Source: Utricularia gibba
Lineage: Eukaryota > Plantae > Magnoliophyta
Assembly: GCA_002189035.1 (NCBI GenBank)
Contig: NEEC01000101.1
Location: 1 to 64,000, forward strand
Direction of reading: 5' to 3'
DNA: 64,000 nt
In this document: piece after piece, positions 1-64,000 of the stretch
Layout of the letters: each line of letters starts with the position of its first letter
How positions within the stretch are numbered: position 1 is the first letter of the stretch
Notes under the pieces: model-generated
Databases searched by the model: none
The model's input: only the letters and a program-made list of their open reading frames with translations
What the model was told of the DNA's origin: nothing
Position numbers and translations under genes: made by a program

Positions 1-77
1 GCTCTCGGGGGGTTTTGGGATTGGGCCAGAGGTCGGGTCGGGCTCACGCCCATAGTCAGTTGTAGCCCGGAAAATAA

Positions 78-392
78 GTGATGCATTTATCAACGTTGGG
101 TTTTCGGCGGCTGCCTAAATGGTTTTTCAAGCAACAGCTTGCCGTTTTAAGGCGGGTGCTGTCGTTGGCAGCTTTGTAAGGGCCCAAGGTTTGGTCTGGC
201 TCCTGAGCCCAATCGGGTCCTACTCGATGAAAATCGTGATGCATTTAATGAAGTTAGGATGTCATGAGCGCCCCAAATGGTTTTCTCAACAACCTGATTT
301 ATATTTGACGAGGTGCTCTAGGCTGGCACTAGTATCGAGCAAATGGTCGAGTCGCGCTCTGGCCCATAGTCATTTGTAGCCCGGCCAAAAAA
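78..392. repeat. Internal ~157-bp sub-repeat: each 314-bp monomer is a diverged dimer
   Basis: GTGATGCATTTA occurs at 78, 236 and 393 (spacing 158 and 157). The two halves share further collinear blocks: GTT.GG, AAATGGTTTT, CAAC, GGTGCT, TGGCA. Confidence 0.85.
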
Positions 393-1618
393 GTGATGCA
401 TTTATTAACGTTGGGTTTTCGGCGGCTGCCTACATGCTTTTTCAAGGAAAAGTTGTCGTTTTTTGGCGGGTGCTGTTGTTGGGAACTTCGTCCGGACCCA
501 AGGTTCGGTCTGACTTCACAGCACAATAGGTCCCATTCGACGAAAATCGTGATACCTTTATTGCTGTTAGGATCTCATGATTACCCAAATGCTTTTTTCA
601 ACAGCATGCTATACACTTGAGAAGGCGCTTTTGTGGGTCACCGAGATCGGCCGGAATTCGGGTCGAGCTCGGGCCCAAAGTCAGCTGTAGCCCGATAAAA
701 GAAGTGATGCATTTATTAACGTTGGGTTGTCGGCGGCTGCCCACATGGTTTTTCAAGCAACAGCTTGCCGTTTTAAGGCGGGTGCTGTCGTTGGCAGCTT
801 TGTAAGGGCCCAAGGTTTGGTCTGGCTCCTGAGCCAATCGGGTCCTACTCGATGAAAATCGTGATGCATTTAATGAAGTTAGGATGTCATGAGCGCCCCA
901 AATGGTTTTCTCAACAACCTGATTTATATTTGACGAGGTGCTCTAGGCTGGCACTAGTATCGAGCAAATGGTCGAGTCGCGCTCTGGCCCATAGTCATTT
1001 GTAGCCCGGCCAAAAAGTGATGCATTTATTAACGTTGGGTTTTCGGCGGCTGCCTACATGCTTTTTCAAGGAAAAGTTGTCGTTTTTTGGCGGGTGCTGT
1101 TGTTGGAACTTCGTCCGGACCCAAGGTTCGGTCTGACTTCACAGCACAATAGGTCCATTCGACGAAAATCGTGATACCTTTATTGAAGTTAGGATCTCAT
1201 GACCGCCCCAAATGCTTTTTTCAACAGCATGCTTTAAACTTGAGAAGGCGCTTTTGTGGGTCACCGAGATCGGGCCGGAATTCAGGTCGGGCTTGGGGGA
1301 CAAAGTCAGCTGTAGCCCGTCAAAAGAAGTGATGCATTTATTAACGTTGGGTTGTCGGCGGCTGCCCACATGGTTTTCAAGCAACAGCTTGCCGTTTTAA
1401 GGCGGGTGCTGTCGTTGGCAGCTTTGTAAGGGCCCAAGGTTTCGGCTCCTGAGCCAATCGGGTCCTACTCGATGAAAATCGTGATGCATTTGCTTTTGTT
1501 AGGATGTCATGAGAACCCAATGGGTTTTCTCCACACTCTACTTTATATTTGAGAAGGCGCTCTCGGGGGGTTTTGGGATTGGGCCAGAGGTCGGGTCGGG
1601 CTCACGCCCATAGTCAGT

Positions 1619-3795
1619 TGTAGCCCGGAAAATAAGTCATGCATTTATCAACGTTGGGTTTTCGGCGGCTGCCTAAATGGTTTTTCAAGCAACAGCTTGC
1701 CGTTTTAAGGCGGGTGCTGTCGTTGGCAGCTTTGTAAGGGCCAAGGTTTGGTCTGGCTCCTGAGCCCAATCGGGTCCTACTCGATGAAAATCGTGATGCA
1801 TTTAATGAAGTTAGGATGTCATGAGCGCCCCAAATGGTTTTCTCAACAACCTGATTTATATTTGACGAGGTGCTCTAGGCTGGCACTAGTATCGAGCAAA
1901 TGGTCGAGTCGCGCTCTGGCCCATAGTCATTTGTAGCCCGGCCAAAAAAGTGATGCATTTATTAACGTTGGGTTTTCGGCGGCTGCCTACATGCTTTTTC
2001 AAGGAAAAGTTGTCGTTTTTTGGCGGGTGCTGTTGTTGGGAACTTCGTCCGGACCCAAGGTTCGGTCTGACTTCACAGCACAATAAGGTCCCATTCGACG
2101 AAAATCGTGATACCTTTATTGCTGTTAGGATCTCATGATTACCCCAAATGCTTTTTTCAACAGCATGCTATACACTTGAGAAGGCGCTTTTGTGGGTCAC
2201 CGAGATCGGCCGGAATTCGGGTCGAGCTCGGGCCCAAAGTCAGCTGTAGCCCGATAAAAGAAGTGATGCATTTATTAACGTTGGGTTGTCGGCGGCTGCC
2301 CACATGGTTTTTCAAGCAACAGCTTGCCGTTTTAAGGCGGGTGCTGTCGTTGGCAGCTTTGTAAGGGCCCAAGGTTTGGTCTGGCTCCTGAGCCCAATCG
2401 GGTCCTACTCGATGAAAATCGTGATGCATTTAATGAAGTTAGGATGTCATGAGCGCCAAAATGGTTTTCTCAACAACCTGATTTTTATTTGACGAGGTGC
2501 TTTAGCTGGCTCTAGTATCGAGCAAATGGTCGAGTCGCGCTCTGGCCCATAGTCATTTGTAGCCCGGAAAAAAGTGATGCATTTATTAACGTTGGGTTTT
2601 CGGCGGCTGCCTACATGCTTTTTCAGAAAAAAGTTGTCGTTTTTTGGCGGGTGCTGTTGTTGGGAACTTCGTCCGGACCCAAGGTTCGGTCTGACTTCAC
2701 AGCACAATAAGGTCCCATTCGACGAAAATCGTGATACCTTTATTGAAGTTAGGATCTCATGAACCCCAAATGCTTTTTTCAACAGCATGCTATACACTTG
2801 AGAAGGCGCTTTTGTGGGTCACCGAGATCGGCCCGGAATTCGGGTCGAGCTCGGGCCCAAAGTCAGCTGTAGCCCGATAAAAGAAGTGATGCATTTATTA
2901 ACGTTGGGTTGTCGGCGGCTGCCCACATGGTTTTTCAAGCAACAGCTTGCCGTTTTAAGGCGGGTGCTGTCGTTGGCAGCTTTGTAAGGGCCCAAGGTTC
3001 GGTCTGGCTCCTGAGCCCAATCGGGTCCTACTCGATGAAAATCGTGATGCATTTAATGAAGTTAGGATGTCATGAGCGCCCCAAATGGTTTTCTCAACAA
3101 CCTGATTTATATTTGACGAGGTGCTCTAGGCTGGCACTAGTATCGAGCAAATGGTCGAGTCGCGCTCTGGCCCATAGTCATTTGTAGCCCGGCCAAAAAA
3201 GTGATGCATTTATTAACGTTGGGTTTTCGGCGGCTGCCTACATGCTTTTTCAAGGAAAAGTTGTCGTTTTTTGGCGGGTGCTGTTGTTGGGAACTTCGTC
3301 CGGACCCAAGGTTCGGTCTGACTTCACAGCACAATAAGGTCCCATTCGACGAAAATCGTGATACCTTTATTGAAGTTAGGATCTCATGACCGCCCCAAAT
3401 GCTTTTTTCAACAGCATGCTTTAAACTTGAGAAGGCGCTTTTGTGGGTCACCGAGATCGGGCCGGAATTCGGTCGAGCTCGGGCCAAAAGTCAGCTGTAG
3501 CCCGTCAAAAGAAGTGATGCATTTATTAACGTTGGGTTGTCGGCGGCTGCCCACATGGTTTTTCAAGCAACAGCTTGCCGTTTTAAGGCGGGTGCTGTCG
3601 TTGGCAGCTTTGTAAGGGCCCAAGGTTCGGCTCTGAGCCCAATCGGGTCCTACTCGATGAAAATCGTGATGCATTTGCTTTTGTTAGGATGTCATGAGAA
3701 CCCAATGGGTTTTCTCCACACTCTACTTTATATTTGAGAAGGCGCTCTCGGGGGTTTGGGATTGGGCCAGAGGTCGGGTCGGGCTCATAGTCAGT
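1619..3795. repeat. 7-mer HOR variant A-(B-C)2-D-E
   Basis: A heads are 2177 bp apart with an extra B/C pair (monomers at ~1932, 2246, 2560, 2868, 3182, 3498). Confidence 0.85.
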
Positions 3796-5309
3796 TGTAG
3801 CCCGGAAAATAAGTGATGCATTTATCAACGTTGGGTTTTCGGCGGCTGCCTAAATGGTTTTTCAAGCAACAGCTTGCCGTTTTAAGGCGGGTGCTGTCGT
3901 TGGCAGCTTTGTAAGGGCCAAGGTTTGGTCTGGCTCCTGAGCCCAATCGGGTCCTACTCGATGAAAATCGTGATGCATTTAATGAAGTTAGGATGTCATG
4001 AGCGCCCCAAATGGTTTTCTCACAACCTGATTTATATTTGACGAGGTGCTCTTGGCACTAGTATCGAGCAAATGGTCGAGTCGCGCTCTGGCCCATAGTC
4101 ATTTGTAGCCCGGCCAAAAAAGTGATGCATTTATTAACGTTGGGTTTTCGGCGGCTGCCTACATGCTTTTTCAAGGAAAAGTTGTCGTTTTTTGGCGGGT
4201 GCTGTTGTTGGGAACTTCGTCCGGACCCAAGGTTCGGTCTGACTTCACAGCACAATAAGGTCCCATTCGACGAAAATCGTGATACCTTTATTGAAGTTAG
4301 GATCTCATGATTACCCCAAATGCTTTTTTCAACAGCATGCTATACACTTGAGAAGGCGCTTTTGTGGGTCACCGAGATCGGCCGGAATTCGGGTCGAGCT
4401 CGGGCCCAAAGTCAGCTGTAGCCCGATAAAAGAAGTGATGCATTTATTAACGTTGGGTTGTCGGCGGCTGCCCACATGGTTTTTCAAGCAACAGCTTGCC
4501 GTTTTAAGGCGGGTGCTGTCGTTGGCAGCTTTGTAAGGGCCCAAGGTTTGGTCTGGCTCCTGAGCCCAATCGGGTCCTACTCGATGAAAATCGTGATGCA
4601 TTTAATGAAGTTAGGATGTCATGAGCGCCCCAAATGGTTTTCTCAACAACCTGATTTATATTTGACGAGGTGCTCTAGGCTGGCACTAGTATCGAGCAAA
4701 TGGTCGAGTCGCGCTCTGGCCCATAGTCATTTGTAGCCCGGCAAAAAAGTGATGCATTTATTAACGTTGGGTTTTCGGCGGCTGCCTACATGCTTTTTCA
4801 AGGAAAAGTTGTCGTTTTTTGGCGGGTGCTGTTGTTGGGAACTTCGTCCGGACCCAAGGTTCGGTCTGACTTCACAGCACAATAAGGTCCCATTCGACGA
4901 AAATCGTGATACCTTTATTGAAGTTAGGATCTCATGACCCCAAATGCTTTTTTCAACAGCATGCTTTAAACTTGAGAAGGCGCTTTTGTGGGTCACCGAG
5001 ATCGGGCCGGAATTCGGGTCGGGCTTGGGGCAAAGTCAGCTGTAGCCCGTCAAAAGAAGTGATGCATTTATTAACGTTGGGTTGTCGGCGGCTGCCCACA
5101 TTTTTCAAGCAACAGCTTGCCGTTTTAAGGCGGGTGCTGTCGTTGGCAGCTTTGTAAGGGCCCAAGGTTCGGCTCTGAGCCCAATCGGGTCCTACTCGAT
5201 GAAAATCGTGATGCATTTGCTTTTGTTAGGATGTCATGAGAACTGGGTTTTCTGAGAAGGCGCTCTCGGGGGGTTGGGATTGGGCCAGAGGTCGGGTCGC
5301 TTAGTCAGT

Positions 5310-7440
5310 TGTAGCCCGGAAAATAAGTCATGCATTTATCAACGTTGGGTTTCGGCGGCTGCCTAAATGGTTTTTCATTGCCGTTTTAAGGCGGGTGCTG
5401 TCGTTGGCAGCTTTGTAAGGGCCCAAGGTTTGGTCTGGCTCCTGAGCCAATCGGGTCCTACTCGATGAAAATCGTGATGCATTTAATGAAGTTAGGATGT
5501 CATGAGCGCCCCAAATGGTTTTCTCAACAACCTGATTTATATTTGACGAGGTGCTCTAGGCTGGCACTAGTATCGAGCAAATGGTCGAGTCGCGCTCTGG
5601 CCCATAGTCATTTGTAGCCGGCCAAAAAAGTGATGCATTTATTAACGTTGGGTTTTCGGCGGCTGCCTACATGCTTTTTCAAGGAAAAGTTGTCGTTTTT
5701 TGGCGGGTGCTGTTGTTGGGAACTTCGTCCGGACCCAAGGTTCGGTCTGACTTCACAGCACAATAAGGTCCCATTCGACGAAAATCGTGATACCTTTATT
5801 GAAGTTAGGATCTCATGCCAAATGCTTTTTTCAACAGCATGCTATACACTTGAGAAGGCGCTTTTGTGGGTCGAGATCGGGCCGGAATTCGGGTCGAGCT
5901 CGGGCCAAAGTCAGCTGTAGCCCGAAAAAGAAGTGATGCATTTATTAACGTTGGGTTGTCGGCGGCTGCCCACATGGTTTTTCAAGCAACAGCTTGCCGT
6001 TTTAAGGCGGGTGCTGTCGTTGGCAGCTTTGTAAGGGCCCAAGGTTTGGTCTGGCTCCTGAGCCCAATCGGGTCCTACTCGATGAAAATCGTGATGCATT
6101 TAATGAAGTTAGGATGTCATGAGCGCCCAAATGGTTTTCTCAACAACCTGATTTTTATTGACGAGGTGCTCTAGGCTGGCACTAGTATCGAGCAAATGGT
6201 CGAGTCGCGCTCTGGCCCATAGTCATTTGTAGCCCGGCCAAAAAAGTGATGCATTTATTAACGTTGGGTTTTCGGCGGCTGCCTACATGCTTTTTCAAGG
6301 AAAAGTTGTCGTTTTTTGGCGGGTGCTGTTGTTGGGAACTTCGTCCGGACCCAAGGTTCGGTCTGACTTCACAGCACAATAAGGTCCCATTCGACGAAAA
6401 TCGTGATACCTTTATTGAAGTTAGGATCTCATGACCCCAAATGCTTTTTTCAACAGCATGCTATACACTTGAGAAGGCGCTTTTGTGGGTCACCGAGATC
6501 GGCCGGAATTCGGGTCGAGCTCGGGCCAAAGTCAGCTGTAGCCCGATAAAAGAAGTGATGCATTTATTAACGTTGGGTTGTCGGCGGCTGCCCACATGGT
6601 TTTTCAAGCAACAGCTTGCCGTTTTAAGGCGGGTGCTGTCGTTGGCAGCTTTGTAAGGGCCCAAGGTTTGGTCTGGCTCCTGAGCCCAATCGGGTCCTAC
6701 TCGATGAAAATCGTGATGCATTTAATGAAGTTAGGATGTCATGAGCGCCCCAAATGGTTTTCTCAACAACCTGATTTATATTTGACGAGGTGCTCTAGGC
6801 TGGCACTAGTATCGAGCAAATGGTCGAGTCGCGCTCTGCCCATAGTCATTTGTAGCCCGGCCAAAAAAGTGATGCATTTATTAACGTTGGGTTTTCGGCG
6901 GCTGCCTACATGCTTTTTCAAGGAAAAGTTGTCGTTTTTTGGCGGGTGCTGTTGTTGGGAACTTCGTCCGGACCCAAGGTTCGGTCTGACTTCACAGCAC
7001 AATAAGGTCCCATTCGACGAAAATCGTGATACCTTTATTGAAGTTAGGATCTCATGACCCCCAAATGCTTTTTTCAACAGCATGCTTTAAACTTGAGAAG
7101 GCGCTTTTGTGGGTCACCGAGATCGGGCCGGAATTCGGTCGAGCTCAAAGTCAGCTGTAGCCCGTCAAAAGAAGTGATGCATTTATTAACGTTGGGTTGT
7201 CGGCGGCTGCCCACATGGTTTTTAAGCAACAGCTTGCCGTTTTAAGGCGGGTGCTGTCGTTGGCAGCTTTGTAAGGGCCAAGGTTCGGCTCCTGAGCCCA
7301 ATCGGGTCCTACTCGATGAAAATCGTGATGCATTTGCTTTTGTTAGGATGTCATGAGAACCCCAATGGTTTTCTCCACACTCTACTTTATATTTGAGAAG
7401 GCGCTATTGGGCAGAGGTCGGGTCGGGCTCAATAGTCAGT
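5310..7440. repeat. 7-mer HOR variant A-(B-C)2-D-E
   Basis: A heads at 5310 and 7441; two B-C pairs precede D-E. Confidence 0.82.
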
Positions 7441-10138
7441 TGTAGCCCGGAAAATAAGTCATGCATTTATCAACGTTGGGTTTTCGGCGGCTGCCTAAAT
7501 GGTTTTTCAAGCAACAGCTTGCCGTTTTAAGGCGGGTGCTGTCGTTGGCAGCTTTGTAAGGGCCCAAGGTTTGGTCTGGCTCCTGAGCCCAATCGGGTCC
7601 TACTCGATGAAAATCGTGATGCATTTAATGAAGTTAGGATGTCATGAGCGCCCCAAATGGTTTTCTCAACAACCTGATTTTATTTGACGAGGTGCTCTAG
7701 CTGGCACTAGTATCGAGCAAATGGTCGAGTCGCGCTCTGGCCCATAGTCATTTGTAGCCCGGCCAAAAAAGTGATGCATTTATTAACGTTGGGTTTTCGG
7801 CGGCTGCCTACATGCTTTTTCAAGGAAAAGTTGTCGTTTTTTGGCGGGTGCTGTTGTTGGGAACTTCGTCCGGACCCAAGGTTCGGTCTGACTTCACAGC
7901 ACAATAAGGTCCCATTCGACGAAAATCGTGATACCTTTATTGAAGTTAGGATCTCATGATTACCCCAAATGCTTTTTTCAACAGCATGCTATACACTTGA
8001 GAAGGCGCTTTTGTGGGTCACCGAGATCGGCCCGGAATTCGGGTCGAGCTCGGCCCAAAGTCAGCTGTAGCCCGAAAAAGAAGTGATGCATTTATTAACG
8101 TTGGGTTGTCGGCGGCTGCCCACATGGTTTTTCAAGCAACAGCTTGCCGTTTTAAGGCGGGTGCTGTCGTTGGCAGCTTTGTAAGGGCCCAAGGTTTGGT
8201 CTGGCTCCTGAGCCCAATCGGGTCCTACTCGATGAAAATCGTGATGCATTTAATGAAGTTAGGATGTCATGAGCGCCCAAATGGTTTTCTCAACAACCTG
8301 ATTTATATTTGACGAGGTGCTCTAGCTGGCACTAGTATCGAGCAAATGGTCGAGTCGCGCTCTGGCCCATAGTCATTTGTAGCCCGGCCAAAAAAGTGAT
8401 GCATTTATTAACGTTGGGTTTTCGGCGGCTGCCTACATGCTTTTTCAAGGAAAAGTTGTCGTTTTTTGGCGGGTGCTGTTGTTGGGAACTTCGTCCGGAC
8501 CCAAGGTTCGGTCTGACTTCACAGCACAATAAGGTCCCATTCGACGAAAATCGTGATACCTTTATTGAGTTAGGATCTCATGACCACCCAAATGCTTTTT
8601 TCAACAGCATGCTATACACTTGAGAAGGCGCTTTTGTGGGTCACCGAGATCGGGCCGGAATTCGGGTCGGCTCGGGCCAAAGTCAGCTGTAGCCGAAAAA
8701 GAAGTGATGCATTTATTAACGTTGGGTTGGCGGCTGCCCACATGGTTTTTCAAGCAACAGCTTGCCGTTTTAAGGCGGGTGCTGTCGTTGGCAGCTTTGT
8801 AAGGGCCCAAGGTTTGGTCTGGCTCCTGAGCCAATCGGGTCCTACTCGATGAAAATCGTGATGCATTTAATGAAGTTAGGATGTCATGAGCGCCCCAAAT
8901 GGTTTTCTCAACAACCTGATTTATATTTGACGAGGTGCTCTAGGCTGGCACTAGTATCGAGCAAATGGTCGAGTCGCGCTCTGGCCCATAGTCATTTGTA
9001 GCCCGGCAAAAAAGTGATGCATTTATTAACGTTGGGTTTTCGGCGGCTGCCTACATGCTTTTTCAAGGAAAAGTTGTCGTTTTTTGGCGGGTGCTGTTGT
9101 TGGGAACTTCGTCCGGACCCAAGGTTCGGTCTGACTTCACAGCACAATAAGGTCCCATTCGACGAAAATCGTGATACCTTTATTGAAGTTAGGATCTCAT
9201 GACCCAAATGCTTTTTTCAACAGCATGCTATAACTTGAGAAGGCGCTTTTGTGGGTCACCGAGATCGGCCGGAATTCGGGTCGAGCTCGGGCCCAAAGTC
9301 AGCTGTAGCCCGATAAAAAAGTGATGCATTTATTAACGTTGGGTTGTCGGCGGCTGCCCACATGGTTTTTCAAGCAACAGCTTGCCGTTTTAAGGCGGGT
9401 GCTGTCGTTGGCAGCTTTGTAAGGGCCCAAGGTTTGGTCTGGCTCCTGAGCCCAATCGGGTCCTACTCGATGAAAATCGTGATGCATTTAATGAAGTTAG
9501 GATGTCATGAGCGCCCCAAATGGTTTTCTCAACAACCTGATTTATATTTGACGAGGTGCTCTAGGCTGGCACTAGTATCGAGCAAATGGTCGAGTCGCGC
9601 TCTGGCCCATAGTCATTTGTAGCCCGGCCAAAAAAGTGATGCATTTATTAACGTTGGGTTTTCGGCGGCTGCCTACATGCTTTTCAAGGAAAGTTGTCGT
9701 TTTTTGGCGGGTGCTGTTGTTGGGAACTTCGTCCGGACCCAAGGTTCGGTCTGACTTCACAGCACAATAAGGTCCCATTCGACGAAAATCGTGATACCTT
9801 TATTGAAGTTAGGATCTCATGACCGCCCCAAATGCTTTTTTCAAGCATGCTTTAAACTTGAGAAGGCGCTTTTGTGGGTCACCGAGATCGGGCCGGAATT
9901 CGGTCGGGCTTGGGGCAAAGTCAGCTGTAGCCCGTCAAAAGAAGTGATGCATTTATTAACGTTGGGTTGTCGGCGGCTGCCCACATGGTTTTAAGCAACA
10001 GCTTGCCGTTTAAGGCGGGTGCTGTCGTTGGCAGCTTTGTAAGGGCCCAAGGTTCGGTCTGAGCCCAAACTTGAAAATCGTGATGCATTTAGGATGTCAT
10101 TGGGTTGAGAAGGCGCTCTCGATTGGTCGGAGGTCAGT
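7441..10138. repeat. 9-mer HOR variant A-(B-C)3-D-E
   Basis: A heads at 7441 and ~10139; three B-C pairs (~7752/8066, ~8378/8688, ~8996/9305), then D (~9617) and a partly deleted E (~9927). Confidence 0.8.
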
Positions 10139-15200: not shown

Positions 15201-15992
15201 AATCGGGTCCTACTCGATGAAAATCGTGATGCATTTAATGAAGTTAGGATGTCATGAGCGCCCCAAATGGTTTTCTCAACAACCTGATTTATATTTGACG
15301 AGGTGCTCTAGGCTGGCTAGTATCGAGCAAATGGTCGAGTCGCGCTCTGGCCCATAGTCATTTGTAGCCCGGCCAAAAAAGTGATGCATTTATTAACGTT
15401 GGGTTTTCGGCGGCTGCCTACATGCTTTTTGAAGGCAAAAGTTGTCGTTTTTTGGCGGGTGCTGTTGTTGGGAACTTCGTCCGGACCCAAGGTTCGGTCT
15501 GACTTCACAGCACAATAAGGTCCCATTCGACGAAAATCGTGATACCTTTATTGAAGTTAGGATCTCATGACCGCCCCAAATGCTTTTTTCAACAGCATGC
15601 TTTAAACTTGAGAAGGCGCTTTTGTGGGTCACCGAGATCGGGCCGGAATTCAGGTCGGGCTTGGGGGACAAAGTCAGCTGTAGCCCGTCAAAAGAAGTGA
15701 TGCATTTATTAACGTTGGCTTGTCGGCGGCTGCCCACATGGTTTTTAAAGCAACAGCTTGCCGTTTTAAGGCGGGTGCTGTCGTTGGCAGCTTTGTAAGG
15801 GCCCAAGGTTCGGTCTGGCTCCTGAGCCCAATCGGGTCCTACTCGATGAAAATCGTGATGCATTTGCTTTTGTTAGGATGTCATGAGAACCCCAATGGGT
15901 TTTCTCCACACTCTACTTTATATTTGAGAAGGCGCTCTCGGGGGTTTAGGGATTGGGCCAGAGGTCGGGTCGGGCTCACGCCCATAGTCAGT
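12272..15992. repeat. Four consecutive 3-mer HORs (A-D-E, ~0.91-0.94 kb)
   Basis: A heads at 12272, 13185, 14114, 15051 and 15993; the cleanest interval is 942 bp (3 x 314), and no C monomer is present. Confidence 0.88.
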
Positions 15993-40100: not shown

Positions 40101-40480
40101 TTGAGAAGGCGCTTTTGTGGGTCACCGAGATCGGGCCGGAATTCGGTCGGCTTGGGGACAAAGTCAGCTGTAGCCCGTCAAAAGAATGATGCATTTATTA
40201 ACGTTGGGTTGTCGGCGGCTGCCCACATGGTTTTTAAAGCAACAGCTTGCCGTTTTAAGGCGGGTGCTGTCGTTGGCAGCTTTGTAAGGGCCCAAGGTTC
40301 GGTCTGGCTCCTGAGCCCAATCGGGTCCTACTCGATGAAAATCGTGATGCATTTGCTTTTGTTAGGATGTCATGAGAACCCAATGGGTTTTCTCCACACT
40401 CTACTTTATATTTGAGAAGGCGCTCTCGGGGGGTTTGGGATTGGGCCAGAGGTCGGGTCGGGCTCACGCCCATAGTCAGT

Positions 40481-53400: not shown

Positions 53401-56400
53401 TGTTGTTGGGAACTTCGTCCGGACCCAAGGTTCGGTCTGACTTCACAGCACAATAAGGTCCCATTCGACGAAAATCGTGATACCTTTATTGAAGTTAGGA
53501 TCTCATGACCGCCCAAATGCTTTTTTCAACAGCATGCTTTAAACTTGAGAAGGCGCTTTTGTGGGTCACCGAGATCGGGCCGGAATTCAGGTCGGGCTTG
53601 GGGACAAAGTCAGCTGTAGCCCGTCAAAAGAAGTGATGCATTTATTAACGTTGGCTTGTCGGCGGCTGCCCACATGGTTTTTAAAGCAACAGCTTGCCGT
53701 TTTAAGGCGGGTGCTGTCGTTGGCAGCTTTGTAAGGGCCCAAGGTTCGGTCTGGCTCCTGAGCCCAATCGGGTCCTACTCGATGAAAATCGTGATGCATT
53801 TGCTTTTGTTAGGATGTCATGAGAACCCCAATGGGTTTTCTCCACACTCTACTTTATATTTGAGAAGGCGCTCTCGGGGGGTTTAGGGATTGGGCCAGAG
53901 GTCGGGTCGGGCTCACGCCCATAGTCAGTTGTAGCCCGGAAAATAAGTCATGCATTTATCAACGTTGGGTTTCGGCGGCTGCCTAAATGGTTTTTCAAGC
54001 AACAGCTTGCCGTTTTAAGGCGGGTGCTGTCGTTGGCAGCTTTGTACGGGCCCAAGGTTTGGTCTGGCTCCTGAGCCCAATCGGGTCCTACTCGATGAAA
54101 ATCGTGATGCATTTAATGAAGTTAGGATGTCATGAGCGCCCCAAATGGTTTTCTCAACAACCTGATTTATATTTGACGAGGTGCTCTAGGCTGGCACTAG
54201 TATCGAGCAAATGGTCGAGTCGCGCTCTGGCCCATAGTCATTTGTAGCCCGGCCAAAAAAGTGATGCATTTATTAACGTTGGGTTTTCGGCGGCTGCCTA
54301 CATGCTTTTTGAGGCAAAAGTTGTCGTTTTTTGGCGGGTGCTGTTGTTGGGAACTTCGTCCGGACCCAAGGTTCGGTCTGACTTCACAGCACAATAAGGT
54401 CCCATTCGACGAAAATCGTGATACCTTTATTGCTGTTAGGATCTCATGATTACCCCAAATGCTTTTTTCAACAGCATGCTATACACTTGAGAAGGCGCTT
54501 TTGTGGGTCACCGAGATCGGCCCGGAATTCGGGTCGAGCTCGGGCCCAAAGTCAGCTGTAGCCCGATAAAAGAAGTGATGCATTTATTAACGTTGGGTTG
54601 TCGGCGGCTGCCCACATGGTTTTTCAAGCAACAGCTTGCCGTTTTAAGGCGGGTGCTGTCGTTGACAGCTTTAAGGGCCCAAGGTTTGGTCTGGCTCCTG
54701 AGCCCAATCGGGTCCTACTCGATGAAAATCGTGATGCATTTAATGAAGTTAGGATGTCATGAGCCCCCAAATGGTTTTCTCAACAACCTGATTTATATTT
54801 GACGAGGTGCTCTAGGCTGGCACTAGTATCGAGCAAATGGTCGAGTCGCGCTCTGGCCCATAGTCATTTGTAGCCTGGTCAAAAAAGCGATGCATTTATT
54901 AACGTTGGGTTTTCGGCGGCTGCCTACATGCTTTTTGAAGCAAAAGTTGTCGTTTTTTGGCGGGTGCTGTTGGGAACTTCGTCCGGACCCAAGGTTCGGT
55001 CTGACTTCACAGCACAATAAGGTCCCATTCGACGAAAATCGTGATACCTTTATTGAAGTTAGGATCTCATGACCGCCCCAAATGCTTTTTTCAACAGCAT
55101 GCTTTAAACTTGAGAAGGCGCTTTTGTGGGTCACCGAGATCGGGCCGGAATTCAGGTCGGGCTTGGGGACAAAGTCAGCTGTAGCCCGTCAAAAGAAGTG
55201 ATGCATTTATTAACGTTGGCTTGTCGCGGCTGCCCACATGGTTTTTAAAGCAACAGCTTGCCGTTTTAAGGCGGGTGCTGTCGTTGGCAGCTTTGTAAGG
55301 CCCAAGGTTCGGTCTGGCTCCTGAGCCCAATCGGGTCCTACTCGATGAAAATCGTGATGCATTTGCTTTTGTTAGGATGTCATGAGAACCCCAATGGGTT
55401 TTCTCCACACTCTACTTTATATTTGAGAAGGCGCTCTCGGGGGTTTAGGGATTGGGCCAGAGGTCGGGTCGGGCTCACGCCCATAGTCAGTTGTAGCCCG
55501 GAAAATAAGTCATGCATTTATCAACGTTGGGTTTTCGGCGGCTGCCTAAATGGTTTTTCAAGCAACAGCTTGCCGTTTTAAGGCGGGTGCTGTCGTTGGC
55601 AGCTTTGTAGGGCCCAAGGTTTGGTCTGGCTCCTGAGCCCAATCGGGTCCTACTCGATGAAAATCGTGATGCATTTAATGAAGTTAGGATGTCATGAGCG
55701 CCCCAAATGGTTTTCTCAACAACCTGATTTATATTTGACGAGGTGCTCTAGGCTGGCACTAGTATCGAGCAAATGGTCGAGTCGCGCTCTGGCCCATAGT
55801 CATTTGTAGCCCGGCCAAAAAAGTGATGCATTTATTAACGTTGGGTTTTCGGCGGCTGCCTACATGCTTTTTCAAGGAAAAGTTGTCGTTTTTTGGCGGG
55901 TGCTGTTGTTGGGAACTTCGTCCGGACCCAAGGTTCGGTCTGACTTCACAGCACAATAAGGTCCCATTCGACGAAAATCGTGATACCTTTATTGCAGTTA
56001 GGATCTCATGATTACCCCAAATGCTTTTTTCAACAGCATGCTATACACTTGAGAAGGCGCTTTTGTGGGTCACCGAGATCGGCCCGGAATTCGGGTCGAG
56101 CTCGGGCCCAAAGTCAGCTGTAGCCCGACAAAAGAAGTGATGCATTTATTAACGTTGGGTTGTCGGCGGCTGCCCACATGGTTTTTCAAGCAACAGCTTG
56201 CCGTTTTAAGGCGGGTGCTGTCGTTGCAGCTTTGTAAGGGCCCAAGGTTTGGTCTGGCTCCTGAGCCCAATCGGGTCCTACTCGATGAAAATCGTGATGC
56301 ATTTAATGAAGTTAGGATGTCATGAGCGCCCCAAATGGTTTTCTCAACAACCTGATTTATATTTGACGAGGTGCTCTAGGCTGGCACTAGTATCGAGCAA

Positions 56401-56997
56401 ATGGTCGAGTCGCGCTCTGGCCCATAGTCATTTGTAGCCGGCAAAAAAGCGATGCATTTATTAACGTTGGGTTTTCGGCGGCTGCCTACATGCTTTTTCA
56501 AGGAAAAGTTGTCGTTTTTTGGCGGGTGCTGTTGTTGGGAACTTCGTCCGGACCCAAGGTTCGGTCTGACTTCACAGCACAATAAGGTCCCATTCGACGA
56601 AAATCGTGATACCTTTATTGAAGTTAGGATCTCATGACCGCCCCAAATGCTTTTTTCAACAGCATGCTTTAAACTTGAGAAGGCGCTTTTGTGGGTCACC
56701 GAGATCGGGCCGGAATTCAGGTCGGGCTTGGGGGACAAAGTCAGCTGTAGCCCGTCAAAAGAAGTGATGCATTTATTAACGTTGGTTGTCGGCGGCTGCC
56801 CACATTTTTCAAGCAACAGCTTGCCGTTTTAAGGCGGGTGCTGTCGTTGGCAGCTTTGTAAGGGCCCAAGGTTCGGCTCCTGAGCCCAATCGGGTCCTAC
56901 TCGATGAAAATCGTGATGCATTTGCTTTTGTTAGGATGTCATGAGAACCCCAATGGGTTTTCTCCACACTCTACTTTATATTTGAGAAGGCGCTCTC

Positions 56998-57033
56998 GGG
57001 GGGTTTAGGGATTGGGCCAGAGGTCGGGTCGGG
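56998..57033 (+). other. Putative G-quadruplex-forming motif containing a plant-type telomere repeat (example; one per intact HOR, in the E tail)
   Basis: GGGGGG TTTA GGG ATT GGG CCAGAGGTC GGG TC GGG has five G-tracts of 3 or more with loops of 4, 3, 9 and 2 nt. Folding is predicted from the motif only. Confidence 0.55.
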
Positions 57034-57051
57034 CTCACGCCCATAGTCAGT

Positions 57052-57365
57052 TGTAGCCCGGAAAATAAGTCATGCATTTATCAACGTTGGGTTTTCGGCG
57101 GCTGCCTAAATGGTTTTTCAAGCAACAGCTTGCCGTTTTAAGGCGGGTGCTGTCGTTGGCAGCTTTGTACGGGCCCAAGGTTTGGTCTGGCTCCTGAGCC
57201 CAATCGGGTCCTACTCGATGAAAATCGTGATGCATTTAATGAAGTTAGGATGTCATGAGCGCCCCAAATGGTTTTCTCAACAACCTGATTTATATTTGAC
57301 GAGGTGCTCTAGGCTGGCACTAGTATCGAGCAAATGGTCGAGTCGCGCTCTGGCCCATAGTCATT
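57052..57365. repeat. Monomer type A (example)
   Basis: Head CAGTTGTAGCCCGGAAAATAAGTCATGCATTTATCAACG...CTGCCTAAATGG; tail TTTAATGAAGTTAGGATGTCATGAGCGCCCC...GGCACTAGTATCGAGC...CTCTGGCCCAT. Confidence 0.9.
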
Positions 57366-57679
57366 TGTAGCCCGGCCAAAAAAGTGATGCATTTATTAAC
57401 GTTGGGTTTTCGGCGGCTGCCTACATGCTTTTTCAAGGAAAAGTTGTCGTTTTTTGGCGGGTGCTGTTGTTGGGAACTTCGTCCGGACCCAAGGTTCGGT
57501 CTGACTTCACAGCACAATAAGGTCCCATTCGACGAAAATCGTGATACCTTTATTGCTGTTAGGATCTCATGATTACCCCAAATGCTTTTTTCAACAGCAT
57601 GCTATACACTTGAGAAGGCGCTTTTGTGGGTCACCGAGATCGGCCCGGAATTCGGGTCGAGCTCGGGCCCAAAGTCAGC
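57366..57679. repeat. Monomer type B (example)
   Basis: Head CATTTGTAGCCCGGCCAAAAAAGTG, body GGGAACTTCGTCCGGACCC...CACAGCACAATAAGG, tail TATTGCTGTT...GATTACCCC...CTATACAC...GGGTCGAGCTCGGGCCCAA. Confidence 0.9.
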
Positions 57680-57994
57680 TGTAGCCCGACAAAAGAAGTG
57701 ATGCATTTATTAACGTTGGGTTGTCGGCGGCTGCCCACATGGTTTTTCAAGCAACAGCTTGCCGTTTTAAGGCGGGTGCTGTCGTTGGCAGCTTTGTAAG
57801 GGCCCAAGGTTTGGTCTGGCTCCTGAGCCCAATCGGGTCCTACTCGATGAAAATCGTGATGCATTTAATGAAGTTAGGATGTCATGAGCGCCCCAAATGG
57901 TTTTCTCAACAACCTGATTTATATTTGACGAGGTGCTCTAGGCTGGCACTAGTATCGAGCAAATGGTCGAGTCGCGCTCTGGCCCATAGTCATT
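57680..57994. repeat. Monomer type C (example): E-like head joined to A-like tail
   Basis: Head CAGCTGTAGCCCGA(T/C)AAAAGAAGTG...GGGTTGTCGGCGGCTGCCCACATGG resembles E; the second half is essentially identical to the second half of A. Confidence 0.9.
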
Positions 57995-58308
57995 TGTAGC
58001 CTGGTCAAAAAAGTGATGCATTTATTAACGTTGGGTTTTCGGCGGCTGCCTACATGCTTTTTCAAGGAAAAGTTGTCGTTTTTTGGCGGGTGCTGTTGTT
58101 GGGAACTTCGTCCGGACCCAAGGTTCGGTCTGACTTCACAGCACAATAAGGTCCCATTCGACGAAAATCGTGATACCTTTATTGAAGTTAGGATCTCATG
58201 ACCGCCCCAAATGCTTTTTTCAACAGCATGCTTTAAACTTGAGAAGGCGCTTTTGTGGGTCACCGAGATCGGGCCGGAATTCAGGTCGGGCTTGGGGACA
58301 AAGTCAGC
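57995..58308. repeat. Monomer type D (example), sister of B
   Basis: Same body as B, but the tail reads TATTGAAGTT...GACCGCCCC...CTTTAAAC...CAGGTCGGGCTTGGGGACAA. Confidence 0.9.
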
Positions 58309-58611
58309 TGTAGCCCGTCAAAAGAAGTGATGCATTTATTAACGTTGGTTGTCGGCGGCTGCCCACATTTTTTAAAGCAACAGCTTGCCGTTTTAAGGCG
58401 GGTGCTGTCGTTGGCAGCTTTGTAAGGGCCCAAGGTTCGGCTCCTGAGCCCAATCGGGTCCTACTCGATGAAAATCGTGATGCATTTGCTTTTGTTAGGA
58501 TGTCATGAGAACCCCAATGGGTTTTCTCCACACTCTACTTTTATTTGAGAAGGCGCTCTCGGGGGTTTGGATTGGGCCAGAGGTCGGGTCGGGCTCACGC
58601 CCATAGTCAGT
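58309..58611. repeat. Monomer type E (example), carrying the G-rich block
   Basis: Head CAGCTGTAGCCCGTCAAAAGAAG; distinctive tail GCATTTGCTTTTGTTAGG...CCACACTCTACTTT...GCGCTCTCGGGGG TTT(A)GG(G)ATTGGGCCAGAGGTCGGGTCGGGCTCACGCCCAT. Confidence 0.9.
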
Positions 58612-60173
58612 TGTAGCCCGGAAAATAAGTCATGCATTTATCAACGTTGGGTTTTCGGCGGCTGCCTAAATGGTTTTTCAAGCAACAGCTTGCCGTTTTA
58701 AGGCGGGTGCTGTCGTTGGCAGCTTTGTAAGGGCCCAAGGTTTGGTCTGGCTCCTGAGCCCAATCGGGTCCTACTCGATGAAAATCGTGATGCATTTAAT
58801 GAAGTTAGGATGTCATGAGCGCCCCAAATGGTTTTCTCAACAACCTGATTTATATTTGACGAGGTGCTCTAGGCTGGCACTAGTATCGAGCAAATGGTCG
58901 AGTCGCGCTCTGGCCCATAGTCATTTGTAGCCCGGCCAAAAAAGTGATGCATTTATTAACGTTGGGTTTTCGGCGGCTGCCTACATGCTTTTTCAAGGAA
59001 AAGTTGTCGTTTTTTGGCGGGTGCTGTTGTTGGGAACTTCGTCCGGACCCAAGGTTCGGTCTGACTTCACAGCACAATAAGGTCCCATTCGACGAAAATC
59101 GTGATACCTTTATTGCTGTTAGGATCTCATGATTACCCCAAATGCTTTTTTCAACAGCATGCTATACACTTGAGAAGGCGCTTTTGTGGGTCACCGAGAT
59201 CGGCCCGGAATTCGGGTCGAGCTCGGGCCCAAAGTCAGCTGTAGCCCGATAAAAGAAGTGATGCATTTATTAACGTTGGGTTGTCGGCGGCTGCCCACAT
59301 GGTTTTTCAAGCAACAGCTTGCCGTTTTAAGGCGGGTGCTGTCGTTGACAGCTTTGTAAGGGCCCAAGGTTTGGTCTGGCTCCTGAGCCCAATCGGGTCC
59401 TACTCGATGAAAATCGTGATGCATTTAATGAAGTTAGGATGTCATGAGCGCCCCAAATGGTTTTCTCAACAACCTGATTTATATTTGACGAGGTGCTCTA
59501 GGCTGGCACTAGTATCGAGCAAATGGTCGAGTCGCGCTCTGGCCCATAGTCATTTGTAGCCCGGCCAAAAAAGTGATGCATTTATTAACGTTGGGTTTTC
59601 GGCGGCTGCCTACATGCTTTTTCAAGGAAAAGTTGTCGTTTTTTGGCGGGTGCTGTTGTTGGGAACTTCGTCCGGACCCAAGGTTCGGTCTGACTTCACA
59701 GCACAATAAGGTCCCATTCGACGAAAATCGTGATACCTTTATTGAAGTTAGGATCTCATGACCGCCCCAAATGCTTTTTTCAACAGCATGCTTTAAACTT
59801 GAGAAGGCGCTTTTGTGGGTCACCGAGATCGGGCCGGAATTCAGGTCGGGCTTGGGGGACAAAGTCAGCTGTAGCCCGTCAAAAGAAGTGATGCATTTAT
59901 TAACGTTGGTTGTCGGCGGCTGCCCACATTTTCAAGCAACAGCTTGCCGTTTTAAGGCGGGTGCTGTCGTTGGCAGCTTTGTAAGGGCCCAAGGTTCGGC
60001 TCTCCTGAGCCCAATCGGGTCCTACTCGATGAAAATCGTGATGCATTTGCTTTTGTTAGGATGTCATGAGAACCCCAATGGGTTTTCTCCACACTCTACT
60101 TTATATTTGAGAAGGCGCTCTCGGGGGTTTGGGATTGGGCCAGAGGTCGGTCGGGCTCACGCCCATAGTCAGT

Positions 60174-62352
60174 TGTAGCCCGGAAAATAAGTCATGCATT
60201 TATCAACGTTGGGTTTTCGGCGGCTGCCTAAATGGTTTTTCAAGCAACAGCTTGCCGTTTTAAGGCGGGTGCTGTCGTTGGCAGCTTTGTAAGGGCCCAA
60301 GGTTTGGTCTGGCTCCTGAGCCCAATCGGGTCCTACTCGATGAAAATCGTGATGCATTTAATGAAGTTAGGATGTCATGAGCGCCCCAAATGGTTTTCTC
60401 AACAACCTGATTTATATTTGACGAGGTGCTCTAGGCTGGCACTAGTATCGAGCAAATGGTCGAGTCGCGCTCTGGCCCATAGTCATTTGTAGCCCGGCCA
60501 AAAAAGTGATGCATTTATTAACGTTGGGTTTTCGGCGGCTGCCTACATGCTTTTTCAAGGAAAAGTTGTCGTTTTTTGGCGGGTGCTGTTGTTGGGAACT
60601 TCGTCCGGACCCAAGGTTCGGTCTGACTTCACAGCACAATAAGGTCCCATTCGACGAAAATCGTGATACCTTTATTGCTGTTAGGATCTCATGATTACCC
60701 CAAATGCTTTTTTCAACAGCATGCTATACACTTGAGAAGGCGCTTTTGTGGGTCACCGAGATCGGCCCGGAATTCGGGTCGAGCTCGGGCCCAAAGTCAG
60801 CTGTAGCCCGATAAAAGAAGTGATGCATTTATTAACGTTGGGTTGTCGGCGGCTGCCCACATGGTTTTTCAAGCAACAGCTTGCCGTTTTAAGGCGGGTG
60901 CTGTCGTTGGCAGCTTTGTAAGGGCCCAAGGTTTGGTCTGGCTCCTGAGCCCAATCGGGTCCTACTCGATGAAAATCGTGATGCATTTAATGAAGTTAGG
61001 ATGTCATGAGCGCCCAAATGGTTTTCTCAACAACCTGATTTTTATTGACGAGGTGCTTTAGCTGGCTCTAGTATCGAGCAAATGGTCGAGTCGCGCTCTG
61101 GCCCATAGTCATTTTTAGCCCGGCAAAAAAGTGATGCATTTATTAACGTTGGGTTTTCGGCGGCTGCCTACATGCTTTTTCAAGGAAAAGTTGTCGTTTT
61201 TTGGCGGGTGCTGTTGTTGGGAACTTCGTCCGGACCCAAGGTTCGGTCTGACTTCACAGCACAATAAGGTCCCATTCGACGAAAATCGTGATACCTTTAT
61301 TGAAGTTAGGATCTCATGATTACCCCAAATGCTTTTTTCAACAGCATGCTATACACTTGAGAAGGCGCTTTTGTGGGTCACCGAGATCGGCCCGGAATTC
61401 GGGTCGAGCTCGGGCCCAAAGTCAGCTGTAGCCCGAAAAGAAGTGATGCATTTATTAACGTTGGGTTGTCGGCGGCTGCCCACATGGTTTTTCAAGCAAC
61501 AGCTTGCCGTTTTAAGGCGGGTGCTGTCGTTGGCAGCTTTGTAAGGGCCCAAGGTTGGTCTGGCTCCTGAGCCCAATCGGGTCCTACTCGATGAAAATCG
61601 TGATGCATTTAATGAAGTTAGGATGTCATGAGCGCCCCAAATGGTTTTCTCAACAACCTGATTTATATTTGACGAGGTGCTCTAGGCTGGCACTAGTATC
61701 GAGCAAATGGTCGAGTCGCGCTCTGGCCCATAGTCATTTGTAGCCTGGCAAAAAAGCGATGCATTTATTAACGTTGGGTTTTCGGCGGCTGCCTACATGC
61801 TTTTTCAAGGAAAAGTTGTCGTTTTTTGGCGGGTGCTGTTGTTGGGAACTTCGTCCGGACCCAAGGTTCGGTCTGACTTCACAGCACAATAAGGTCCCAT
61901 TCGACGAAAATCGTGATACCTTTATTGAAGTTAGGATCTCATGACCGCCCCAAATGCTTTTTTCAACAGCATGCTTTAAACTTGAGAAGGCGCTTTTGTG
62001 GGTCACCGAGATCGGGCCGGAATTCAGGTCGGGCTTGGGGACAAAGTCAGCTGTAGCCCGTCAAAAGAAGTGATGCATTTATTAACGTTGGGTTGTCGGC
62101 GGCTGCCCACATTTTCAAGCAACACTTGCCGTTTTAAGGCGGTGCTGTCGTTGGCAGCTTTGTAAGGGCCCAAGGTTCGGCTCCTGAGCCCAATGGGTCC
62201 TACTCGATGAAAATCGTGATGCATTTGCTTTTGTTAGGATGTCATGAGAACCCCAATGGGTTTTCTCCACACTCTACTTTATATTTGAGAAGGCGCTCTC
62301 GGGGTTTTGGGATTGGGCCAGAGGTCGGGTCGGGCTCACGCCCATAGTCAGT
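60174..62352. repeat. 7-mer HOR variant A-(B-C)2-D-E, same haplotype as 1619-3795
   Basis: A heads are 2179 bp apart; the first C carries the rare tail GATTTTTATTGACGAGGTGCTTTAGCTGGCTCTAG. Confidence 0.85.
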
Positions 62353-64000
62353 TGTAGCCCGGAAAATAAGTCATGCATTTATCAACGTTGGGTTTTCGGC
62401 GGCTGCCTAAATGGTTTTTCAAGCAACAGCTTGCCGTTTTAAGGCGGGTGCTGTCGTTGGCAGCTTTGTAAGGGCCCAAGGTTTGGTCTGGCTCCTGAGC
62501 CCAATCGGGTCCTACTCGATGAAAATCGTGATGCATTTAATGAAGTTAGGATGTCATGAGCGCCCCAAATGGTTTTCTCAACAACCTGATTTATATTTGA
62601 CGAGGTGCTCTAGGCTGGCACTAGTATCGAGCAAATGGTCGAGTCGCGCTCTGGCCCATAGTCATTTGTAGCCCGGCCAAAAAAGTGATGCATTTATTAA
62701 CGTTGGGTTTTCGGCGGCTGCCTACATGCTTTTTCAAGGAAAAGTTGTCGTTTTTTGGCGGGTGCTGTTGTTGGGAACTTCGTCCGGACCCAAGGTTCGG
62801 TCTGACTTCACAGCACAATAGGTCCCATTCGACGAAAATCGTGATACCTTTATTGCTGTTAGGATCTCATGATTACCCCAAATGCTTTTTTCAACAGCAT
62901 GCTATACACTTGAGAAGGCGCTTTTGTGGGTCACCGAGATCGGCCGGAATTCGGGTCGAGCTCGGGCCCAAAGTCAGCTGTAGCCCGATAAAAGAAGTGA
63001 TGCATTTATTAACGTTGGGTTGTCGGCGGCTGCCCACATGGTTTTTCAAGCAACAGCTTGCCGTTTTAAGGCGGGTGCTGTCGTTGGCAGCTTTGTAAGG
63101 GCCCAAGGTTGGTCTGGCTCCTGAGCCCAATCGGGTCCTACTCGATGAAAATCGTGATGCATTTAATGAAGTTAGGATGTCATGAGCGCCCCAAATGGTT
63201 TTCTCAACAACCTGATTTATATTTGACGAGGTGCTCTAGGCTGGCACTAGTATCGAGCAAATGGTCGAGTCGCGCTCTGGCCCATAGTCATTTGTAGCCC
63301 GGCCAAAAAAGTGATGCATTTATTAACGTTGGGTTTTCGGCGGCTGCCTACATGCTTTTTCAAGGAAAAGTTGTCGTTTTTTGGCGGGTGCTGTTGTTGG
63401 GAACTTCGTCCGGACCCAAGGTTCGGTCTGACTTCACAGCACAATAAGGTCCCATTCGACGAAAATCGTGATACCTTTATTGAAGTTAGGATCTCATGAC
63501 CGCCCCAAATGCTTTTTTCAACAGCATGCTTTAAACTTGAGAAGGCGCTTTTGTGGGTCACCGAGATCGGGCCGGAATTCAGGTCGGGCTTGGGGACAAA
63601 GTCAGCTGTAGCCCGTCAAAAGAAGTGATGCATTTATTAACGTTGGGTTGTCGGCGGCTGCCCACATTTTCAAGCAACAGCTTGCCGTTTTAAGGCGGGT
63701 GCTGTCGTTGGCAGCTTTGTAAGGGCCCAAGGTTCGGCTCCTGAGCCCAATCGGGTCCTACTCGATGAAAATCGTGATGCATTTGCTTTTGTTAGGATGT
63801 CATGAGAACCCCAATGGGTTTTCTCCACACTCTACTTTATATTTGAGAAGGCGCTCTCGGGGGGTTTTGGATTGGGCCAGAGGTCGGGTCGGGCTCACGC
63901 CCATAGTCAGTTGTAGCCCGGAAAATAAGTCATGCATTTATCAACGTTGGGTTTTCGGCGGCTGCCTAAATGGTTTTTCAAGCAACAGCTTGCCGTTTTA

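What the first reader, a model, noticed from the sequence alone, without database searches (positions are those of the whole stretch)
1..64000. Mirror-like layered organisation: a shared flank haplotype encloses a different central haplotype
B/D monomers read TTTTTCAAGGAAAAG in 1-~11 kb and again from ~55.9 kb, but mostly TTTTTGAAGCAAAAG/GAGGCAAAAG from 11.75 to ~54.9 kb. E carries a 5-bp deletion (GGTTCGGCTCC vs GGTTCGGTCTGGCTCC) at ~1.44, 3.63, 5.17 and 7.28 kb and at ~56.87, 58.44, 60.0, 62.18 and 63.73 kb, but not in between. The E variant CCCACATTTT (loss of GG) occurs at 5.10 kb and in all five E monomers from 56.8 to 63.7 kb. Derived alleles (TTGGCTTGTC in E, GTTGACAGC in C, CCTGGTC...AAGCGATG in D, TTTAGGG) are concentrated in the centre. 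This is the pattern expected if a younger variant expanded inside and split an older array, as described for layered alpha-satellite expansions in the complete human genome.
Basis: partly seen in the sequence, partly recalled or inferred. Interest (0 to 1): 0.75.

Follow-up and report, generated by a model that had tools for sequence, protein, structure and literature searches.

The report
Two repeat variants arranged flank-centre-flank
A plant's 64-kb tandem repeat holds two closely related variants of its 1.56-kb unit, one at both ends and the other between them; this is ordinary for such arrays, and the noisy assembly may have created part of it.

Summary
The whole window is one head-to-tail array of 207 monomers of about 313 bp, forming 42 higher-order units (canonical five-monomer unit of 1.56 kb). 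I do not take it for human: it is a plant satellite, Utricularia gibba by the scan's own notes.

Units at 1-10 kb and 55.4-64 kb share a haplotype: the B-monomer allele C..G, a 5-bp deletion in the last monomer, and a rare seven-monomer unit. The 44 kb between carries a different haplotype. Identity falls with distance, then rises again between the two ends.

The reading "a young centre split an old array" is only partly supported.
- The two haplotypes are sisters; each carries its own derived changes.
- The right flank is the most uniform block (99.7%) and looks like a recent amplification of one left-flank sub-variant.
- The centre is composite: a three-monomer zone, then two uniform core blocks around a mixed middle block.
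- The boundaries are mosaic.

The sequence has about 4 one-base indels per kb. One-base gaps fall on the very sites where the haplotypes differ, mainly at 34-46 kb and 55-60 kb. This suggests blended consensus, so the block order may be an assembly artefact.

Layered satellite expansion has already been invoked in plants. Interest is low.

The parts
1..10124 (+). Left block, flank ('f') haplotype: units 0-4, structures 5-, 7-, 5-, 7- and 9-monomer
   Evidence: unit structures; 12 of 14 B monomers carry C..G (the other two are degenerate), and sites that are derived in the centre are ancestral here; 5-bp deletion in the last monomer of units 0-3. Unit 4 is strongly divergent (23 singleton substitutions).
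10125..12195 (+). Transitional seven-monomer unit 5. The B allele switches from flank to centre type between 10952 and 11572; there is a cluster of deletions at about 10.05-10.2 kb.
   Evidence: B states f, ?, c; last monomer already of centre type; seven separate deletions within about 250 bp at the unit 4/5 junction.
12196..19228 (+). Zone of three-monomer units (ABD, units 6-9, 11, 12) with one five-monomer unit. They carry centre-type alleles, so they are secondary deletion derivatives.
   Evidence: Their first monomers each carry different 10-100 bp deletions.
19229..34133 (+). Core block 1 of the central ('c') haplotype, units 13-22, with irregular units 19-20 at 28.6-31.0 kb
   Evidence: all centre-derived alleles are present; identity within the block is 99.65% (also counting unit 10, leaving out units 19-20), and 99.59% to core block 2.
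34134..44416 (+). Middle block, units 23-29: mixed states, sporadic flank-type B alleles, and one-base gaps exactly at haplotype-discriminating sites
   Evidence: Within-block identity is 99.31%; it is closer to both flanks than the cores are.
44417..55373 (+). Core block 2 of the central haplotype, units 30-36
   Evidence: 99.52% within the block.
55374..64000 (+). Right block, flank haplotype: units 37-41 plus a partial monomer. Units 37-39 are mosaic with centre alleles; units 40-41 are pure left-like; there is one seven-monomer unit at 60058-62235.
   Evidence: all 11 B monomers are C..G, and all 5 last monomers carry the 5-bp deletion plus the loss of GG; 99.71% within the block.
2441..2750 (+). 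Rare middle B monomer of the seven-monomer unit. The same rare variant lies at 10952-11261 and 60998-61307.
   Evidence: shared rare states at alignment columns 46, 63 and 73; the copies at 10952 and 60998 are each other's nearest neighbours, and the nearest neighbour of the 2441 copy is 10952.

Best explanation
The window is a slice of a plant satellite array. The monomer is about 313 bp and is itself an old dimer of about 157-bp units. Two sister haplotypes of that unit lie in blocks.

Both haplotypes descend from a common ancestor, and each fixed its own changes.
- Flank type: G at the second B marker site, then a 5-bp deletion in the last monomer, then loss of GG in a sub-lineage.
- Centre type: G at the first B marker site, plus changes in every monomer slot.

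I infer that the blocks were made by the usual turnover of tandem arrays: unequal exchange or replication-linked amplification of runs of units, with short gene-conversion patches at block edges. On this reading the right block is a recent local amplification of one flank-type sub-variant, not an old relic. The left block is an older, irregular stretch of the same haplotype. The three-monomer units are deletion derivatives of centre-type units.

Shown: the haplotypes, their polarity and the block map in the sequence as given. Inferred: the mechanism, and that the assembled order is real.
For: - Monomer typing and unit map.
- Marker table per unit.
- Polarity from paralogous monomers: (B ancestor C..C; 5-bp deletion derived; centre derived at GGC, GACAGC, CCTGG and TTTTTAAAG).
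- The right flank's last monomers all match the double-derived allele of left unit 2.
- Block identities: (R-R 99.71, core 99.5-99.65, L(0-3) 99.28, L-R 99.33, L-core 98.67).
- Tree split 97/90, with a ladder of progressively derived central units.
- Mosaic units 5 and 37-39.
- The seven-monomer unit with the rare middle B occurs in units 1, 5 and 40.
- The three-monomer units carry centre-derived alleles.
Against: - The block order f / core / middle / core / f is palindromic. Random unequal exchange does not predict this, and the layered model does.
- Nothing beyond the 64-kb slice was seen, so "flank" is relative to the window only.
- The noise pattern means some apparent mosaics, and possibly the order of the blocks, may not exist in the plant.
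Confidence: 0.5

Rival explanations
1. True layered expansion. A flank-type array was split when the centre-type variant arose or landed inside it and expanded, pushing the two halves apart, as described for human alpha satellite and invoked for some plant centromeres.
For: - The ends share derived states and lie on one side of the main tree split.
- Identity against distance is U-shaped.
- The central core is derived and very uniform.
- The left flank is more heterogeneous than the centre.
- core1 and core2 also match each other across the middle block (99.59%), giving a nested symmetric order.
Against: - The centre type lacks the flank's derived states, so it cannot have arisen by mutation from the flank type as it now is.
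- The right flank is more uniform than the centre.
- The innermost block is the least uniform and least derived of the central blocks, the reverse of the model.
- The boundaries are mosaic.
- No evidence places this array at a centromere. One paper states that the putative centromeres of U. gibba lack satellite repeats (PMC8333044).
Confidence: 0.2
2. Assembly artefact. Both haplotypes exist in the genome (in different parts of the array, different arrays or the two homologues). The f-c-f order, the middle block and the mosaic edge units come from a noisy long-read assembler choosing a path through near-identical units and polishing with mixed reads.
For: - There are 4.2 one-base indels per kb against 1.6 singleton substitutions per kb.
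- Isolated one-base gaps coincide with the substitution-polymorphic columns (9 of 31 against 12 of 1219; odds ratio 41, p=2e-10). They cluster in units 23-30 and 37-39.
- At the B marker some copies hold both alleles (GAAGGC) or neither (GAAGAAAAG).
- Clusters of different multi-base deletions sit at unit starts at 5.2, 7.3, 10.1, 12.2, 13.1, 18.4, 28.6 and 30.1 kb.
Against: - Pure flank-type and pure centre-type runs are long and internally consistent (units 0-3, 13-18, 31-36, 40-41).
- The B and last-monomer markers switch together at one point on the right (between units 36 and 37).
- No reads were available, so this is indirect.
Confidence: 0.3

Closest known systems
Layered expansion of human alpha-satellite higher-order repeat arrays (complete human genome work), also invoked for plant centromeres in Papaver (PMC11406182) and Brachypodium (PMC10910784)
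   Same: Tandem array with higher-order units. A distinct haplotype is enclosed by two stretches that share another haplotype. The enclosed core is derived and uniform.
   Different: One flank is younger-looking than the centre. The haplotypes are sisters, not ancestor and descendant. The innermost block is the least uniform. The scale is only 64 kb, and no kinetochore data exist.
Block-wise homogenisation of satellite arrays by unequal crossing-over and gene conversion (classical tandem-repeat turnover; local higher-order-repeat domains as in Arabidopsis centromere arrays; my own knowledge)
   Same: Neighbouring units are most alike. There are variant units with 3, 7 and 9 monomers, mosaic units at block edges, and local bursts of near-identical units.
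   Different: Simple isolation by distance does not predict that the two ends of a 64-kb slice are as alike as adjacent units.
Other arrays of the same ~313-315-bp satellite family in this genome (scan notes s1-184103, s1-249060, s1-182621, s1-219361)
   Same: Same monomer size and ~157-bp sub-unit. Array-specific higher-order units. One note reports a similar flank-centre-flank pattern.
   Different: Those notes are unchecked and their sequences could not be read here.

Membership tests
Higher-order-repeat satellite array | Distinct monomer types recur in a fixed order, and copies of the whole unit are far more alike than the monomers within it | tested here: met
   Four types are 6-24% apart. 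The order ABCBD occurs in 28 of 42 units. Units are about 99% identical.
Layered (mirror-like) expansion | The two flanks are each other's relatives to the exclusion of the centre | tested here: inconclusive
   Shared derived states are clear. In the tree, L and R sit on one side of the 97/90 split, but together with four central units. An L+R clade is not rejected and not shown (AU p=0.425).
Layered (mirror-like) expansion | The centre is younger: more uniform than both flanks, with age increasing outward | tested here: not met
   R 99.71% > cores 99.52-99.65% > middle 99.31% and L(0-3) 99.28%.
Layered (mirror-like) expansion | The central variant descends from the flank variant | tested here: not met
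   The centre lacks the flank's derived G at the second B site and the 5-bp deletion. Each allele is one step from the paralog state C..C.
Layered (mirror-like) expansion | The youngest layer coincides with the active kinetochore (CENH3, hypomethylated dip) | not testable with these tools
   No chromatin or methylation data. PMC8333044 reports that the putative centromeres of U. gibba lack satellites.
Silene X43.1 subtelomeric satellite (313 bp), a guess from memory | Sequence match to the published X43.1 probe | tested here: not met
   An 18-base core of probe 12H5 from PMC3212565 gives no match with up to 3 mismatches.

The most novel reading that the evidence does not exclude
The nested order f / core / middle / core / f is real and is a slice of a true layered centromere core. 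This would sit in a roughly 100-Mb plant genome whose centromeres were reported to lack satellites. The array would then mark an unrecognised satellite centromere, with an unusual reversed age order (ancestral-like innermost block).
Probability: 0.08. Interest if true: 0.45.

Novelty: new member of a known kind. Interest (0 to 1): 0.2.

Why it matters
If the order is real, this is one more plant example of block-wise or layered turnover in a higher-order-repeat array. It would be useful mainly as a marker set for following array evolution in a very small genome. It would also hint that this genome has sizeable satellite arrays despite reports that its centromeres lack them. More practically, the gap-at-variant-site signature warns against reading fine haplotype structure from this assembly's satellite arrays without read-level checks.

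Tried and rejected
- **Silene X43.1 or SacI satellite** (313 bp, guessed from memory): the probe core is absent.
- **Known RNA family in the unit:** none in Rfam at E<=1.
- **C..G / G..C as a compensatory swap in a hairpin:** folding of both alleles gives z-scores near 0. The third stretch folded in that call was mis-positioned and does not cover the C..C copy, so the ancestral-type B was not folded; the paralog A monomer was.
- **Both ends as co-linear copies of a ~58.5-kb super-repeat** (both read 5-, 7-, 5-monomer units): unit-by-unit identities show no diagonal preference. The two seven-monomer units differ by 16 substitutions. The junction after unit 2 has a deletion that is absent after unit 41.
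- **Three-monomer units as relics of an ancestral unit:** they carry centre-derived alleles, so they are secondary.
- **The U. gibba genome paper (PNAS 2017):** not held, so I could not check its statements on repeats.
- **Scan look-up by sequence:** gave nothing.
- **Human origin:** I do not take the contig for human, so that restriction did not apply.
Full report
**What the window is**

The whole 64 kb is one head-to-tail tandem array, with no foreign insert and no inverted stretch.
- Tandem Repeats Finder reports periods of 312-314 bp over the entire window.
- A profile search tiles the window with 207 contiguous monomers.
- G+C is an even 48-50%.
- Each monomer is an old dimer: its two halves of about 157 bp are 57-61% identical.

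This is not human alpha satellite. The scan's own notes call the genome a plant, Utricularia gibba. I did not verify the species. I do not take the contig for human.

**Monomer types and units**

Clustering gives four monomer types at 6% divergence: A 43, B 82, C 40 and D 42 copies.
- Types differ by 6-24%.

There are 42 units plus a partial monomer.

| Structure | Units |
|---|---|
| ABCBD (about 1.56 kb, canonical) | 28 units |
| Seven monomers | 1, 3, 5, 40 |
| Nine monomers | 4 |
| Three monomers (ABD) | 6-9, 11, 12, 20, 27 |

Monomer C is a hybrid. Its first 200 bp match D (92-93%) and its last 115 bp match A (99%). This agrees with another first-reader note on this window.

There are two small corrections.
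- The flank B allele also occurs at four central sites.
- The 5-bp deletion is exact at five sites and carries a further small difference at four.

Counted per monomer:

| Marker | Both ends | Centre | Fisher p |
|---|---|---|---|
| Flank B allele | 23 of 25 B monomers | 4 of 54 | 9e-14 |
| 5-bp deletion | 9 of 10 last monomers | 0 of 31 | 3e-8 |

These tests overstate independence, because neighbouring units are alike. Even so, the same combination recurs in two blocks 45 kb apart. The ends also share a rare structural variant: a seven-monomer unit whose middle B carries a rare haplotype, at 2441, 10952 and 60998.

Mean identity between units falls from 99.37% for neighbours to 98.68% at 45-50 kb, then rises to 99.4-99.6% at 55-65 kb.

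In a maximum-likelihood tree of the 34 units with five or more monomers, one deep split has strong support (97/90). It puts 19 central units on one side. All left units, all right units and central units 19, 25, 26 and 28 are on the other.

**Polarity**

The other monomer types serve as built-in outgroups.
- At the B marker they read C..C, the flank allele is C..G and the central allele is G..C. Each is one step from the ancestor and neither gave rise to the other. One C..C copy survives, at about 23.5 kb in the second B of unit 15 (monomer starting at 23310).
- The 5-bp deletion and the loss of GG are derived in the flanks.
- GGC, GACAGC, CCTGG..., AAGCGATG and TTTTTAAAG are derived in the centre.

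The two haplotypes are therefore sisters. It is not the whole picture.

**Block map**

| Region | Units | Character |
|---|---|---|
| 1-10.1 kb | 0-4 | Flank type, structurally irregular |
| 10.1-12.2 kb | 5 | Transitional |
| 12.2-19.2 kb | 6-12 | Mostly three-monomer units that already carry central alleles |
| 19.2-34.1 kb | 13-22 | Core block of the central type |
| 34.1-44.4 kb | 23-29 | Mixed middle block |
| 44.4-55.4 kb | 30-36 | Second core block |
| 55.4-64 kb | 37-41 | Flank type again |

Substitution identities:

| Comparison | Identity |
|---|---|
| Within right block | 99.71% |
| Within core 1 | 99.65% |
| Within core 2 | 99.52% |
| Within middle block | 99.31% |
| Within left units 0-3 | 99.28% |
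| Left to right | 99.33% |
| Left to cores | 98.67% |
| Core 1 to core 2 | 99.59% |

Four points follow.
- The right block is the most uniform of all. All five of its last monomers carry the deletion plus the loss of GG, a double-derived allele found in only one left unit (unit 2). I infer that it is a recent amplification of one flank sub-variant, not an old relic.
- Units 37-39 mix flank-type B and D monomers with central alleles in A, C and the second B.
- Units 40-41 are purely left-like.
- The innermost block is the least uniform and least derived of the central blocks. This is the reverse of what a layered expansion predicts.

An L+R clade is neither shown nor rejected (AU p=0.425).

**A caution about the sequence itself**

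Relative to the type consensus there are 4.2 one-base indels per kb but only 1.6 singleton substitutions per kb. That is the error profile of a noisy long-read consensus.

More telling, isolated one-base gaps fall on the very columns that carry the haplotype substitutions.
- The overlap is 9 of 31 polymorphic columns against 12 of 1219 others (odds ratio 41, p=2e-10).
- These gaps cluster in units 23-30 and 37-39.
- At the B marker some copies contain both alleles (GAAGGC) or neither (GAAGAAAAG).

A real third haplotype with one-base deletions at five or more of the sites where the other two differ is hard to credit. A consensus called from a mixture of reads of both haplotypes would give exactly this. 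That last step is my inference from how indel-tolerant consensus callers behave.

The middle block and the mosaic right-edge units may therefore be blended consensus. If so, the assembler could not tell the haplotypes apart there, and the assembled order of the blocks is itself uncertain.

Clusters of differing multi-base deletions sit at unit starts at 5.2, 7.3, 10.1, 12.2, 13.1, 18.4, 28.6 and 30.1 kb. They point the same way, or to a fragile G-rich site.

**Verdict on the mechanism**

| Explanation | Probability |
|---|---|
| Two sister haplotypes laid out in blocks by ordinary tandem-array turnover (unequal exchange or replication-linked amplification of runs of units, conversion patches at edges), with the right block a young burst | 0.5 |
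| Genuine layered expansion. It explains the palindromic block order, but fails on flank age, descent and the character of the innermost block | 0.2 |
| Assembly path or polishing artefact | 0.3 |

**Comparison with what is known**

Layered expansion is established for human alpha satellite. It has already been invoked in plants, for Papaver (PMC11406182) and Brachypodium (PMC10910784).

Nothing places this array at a centromere. PMC8333044, citing the genome paper, says the putative centromeric regions of U. gibba lack satellite repeats. The genome paper itself was not held.

The same satellite family, with other higher-order units, was noted on several other pieces of this genome.

This is a new instance of a known kind of organisation and its interest is low. 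The read-level checks under the next steps would settle it.

Noticed in passing
window 34134-46000 and 55374-60057 (units 23-30, 37-39): One-base gaps sit exactly on the sites where the two haplotypes differ by a substitution (odds ratio 41, p=2e-10). This is a likely signature of consensus blended from reads of both haplotypes.
   Followed up: partly
First ~110 bp of A monomers at 5252, 7345, 10125, 12196, 13088, 18393, 27070, 28592, 30101, 41302: The G-rich stretch (G6, TTTA, GGG, ATT, GGG ...) carries at least nine different 9-28 bp deletions, most starting at the G6 run. It is either a real G-tract deletion hotspot or a recurrent consensus failure.
   Followed up: partly
window 2441-2750, 10952-11261, 60998-61307: The seven-monomer unit has a rare variant of its middle B monomer at all three places, so this structural variant was propagated as a unit within the flank haplotype.
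   Followed up: partly
B monomers at 13373, 15246, 16186, 19543, 24249, 25815, 27374, 39136, 43164, 54124: Alleles reading GAGGC or GAAGGC at the B marker occur only in the first B slot of central units. It is unclear whether this is a real sub-allele or a both-alleles consensus call.
   Followed up: no
All C monomers, e.g. 569-880: Monomer C is a hybrid: D-like head (92-93%) and A-like tail (99%). The five-monomer unit probably arose from two three-monomer units by an unequal D/A crossover. The present three-monomer units carry centre-derived alleles and are secondary.
   Followed up: partly
A monomers, 14066-57004: The central T-to-A allele creates one copy of the plant telomere heptamer TTTAGGG per unit. 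A single heptamer is probably chance.
   Followed up: no
whole window: A paper states that U. gibba putative centromeres lack satellite repeats (PMC8333044). Yet this genome, by the scan's notes, holds arrays of at least 64 kb of a 313-bp satellite on several pieces. Their chromosomal position is unknown.
   Followed up: no
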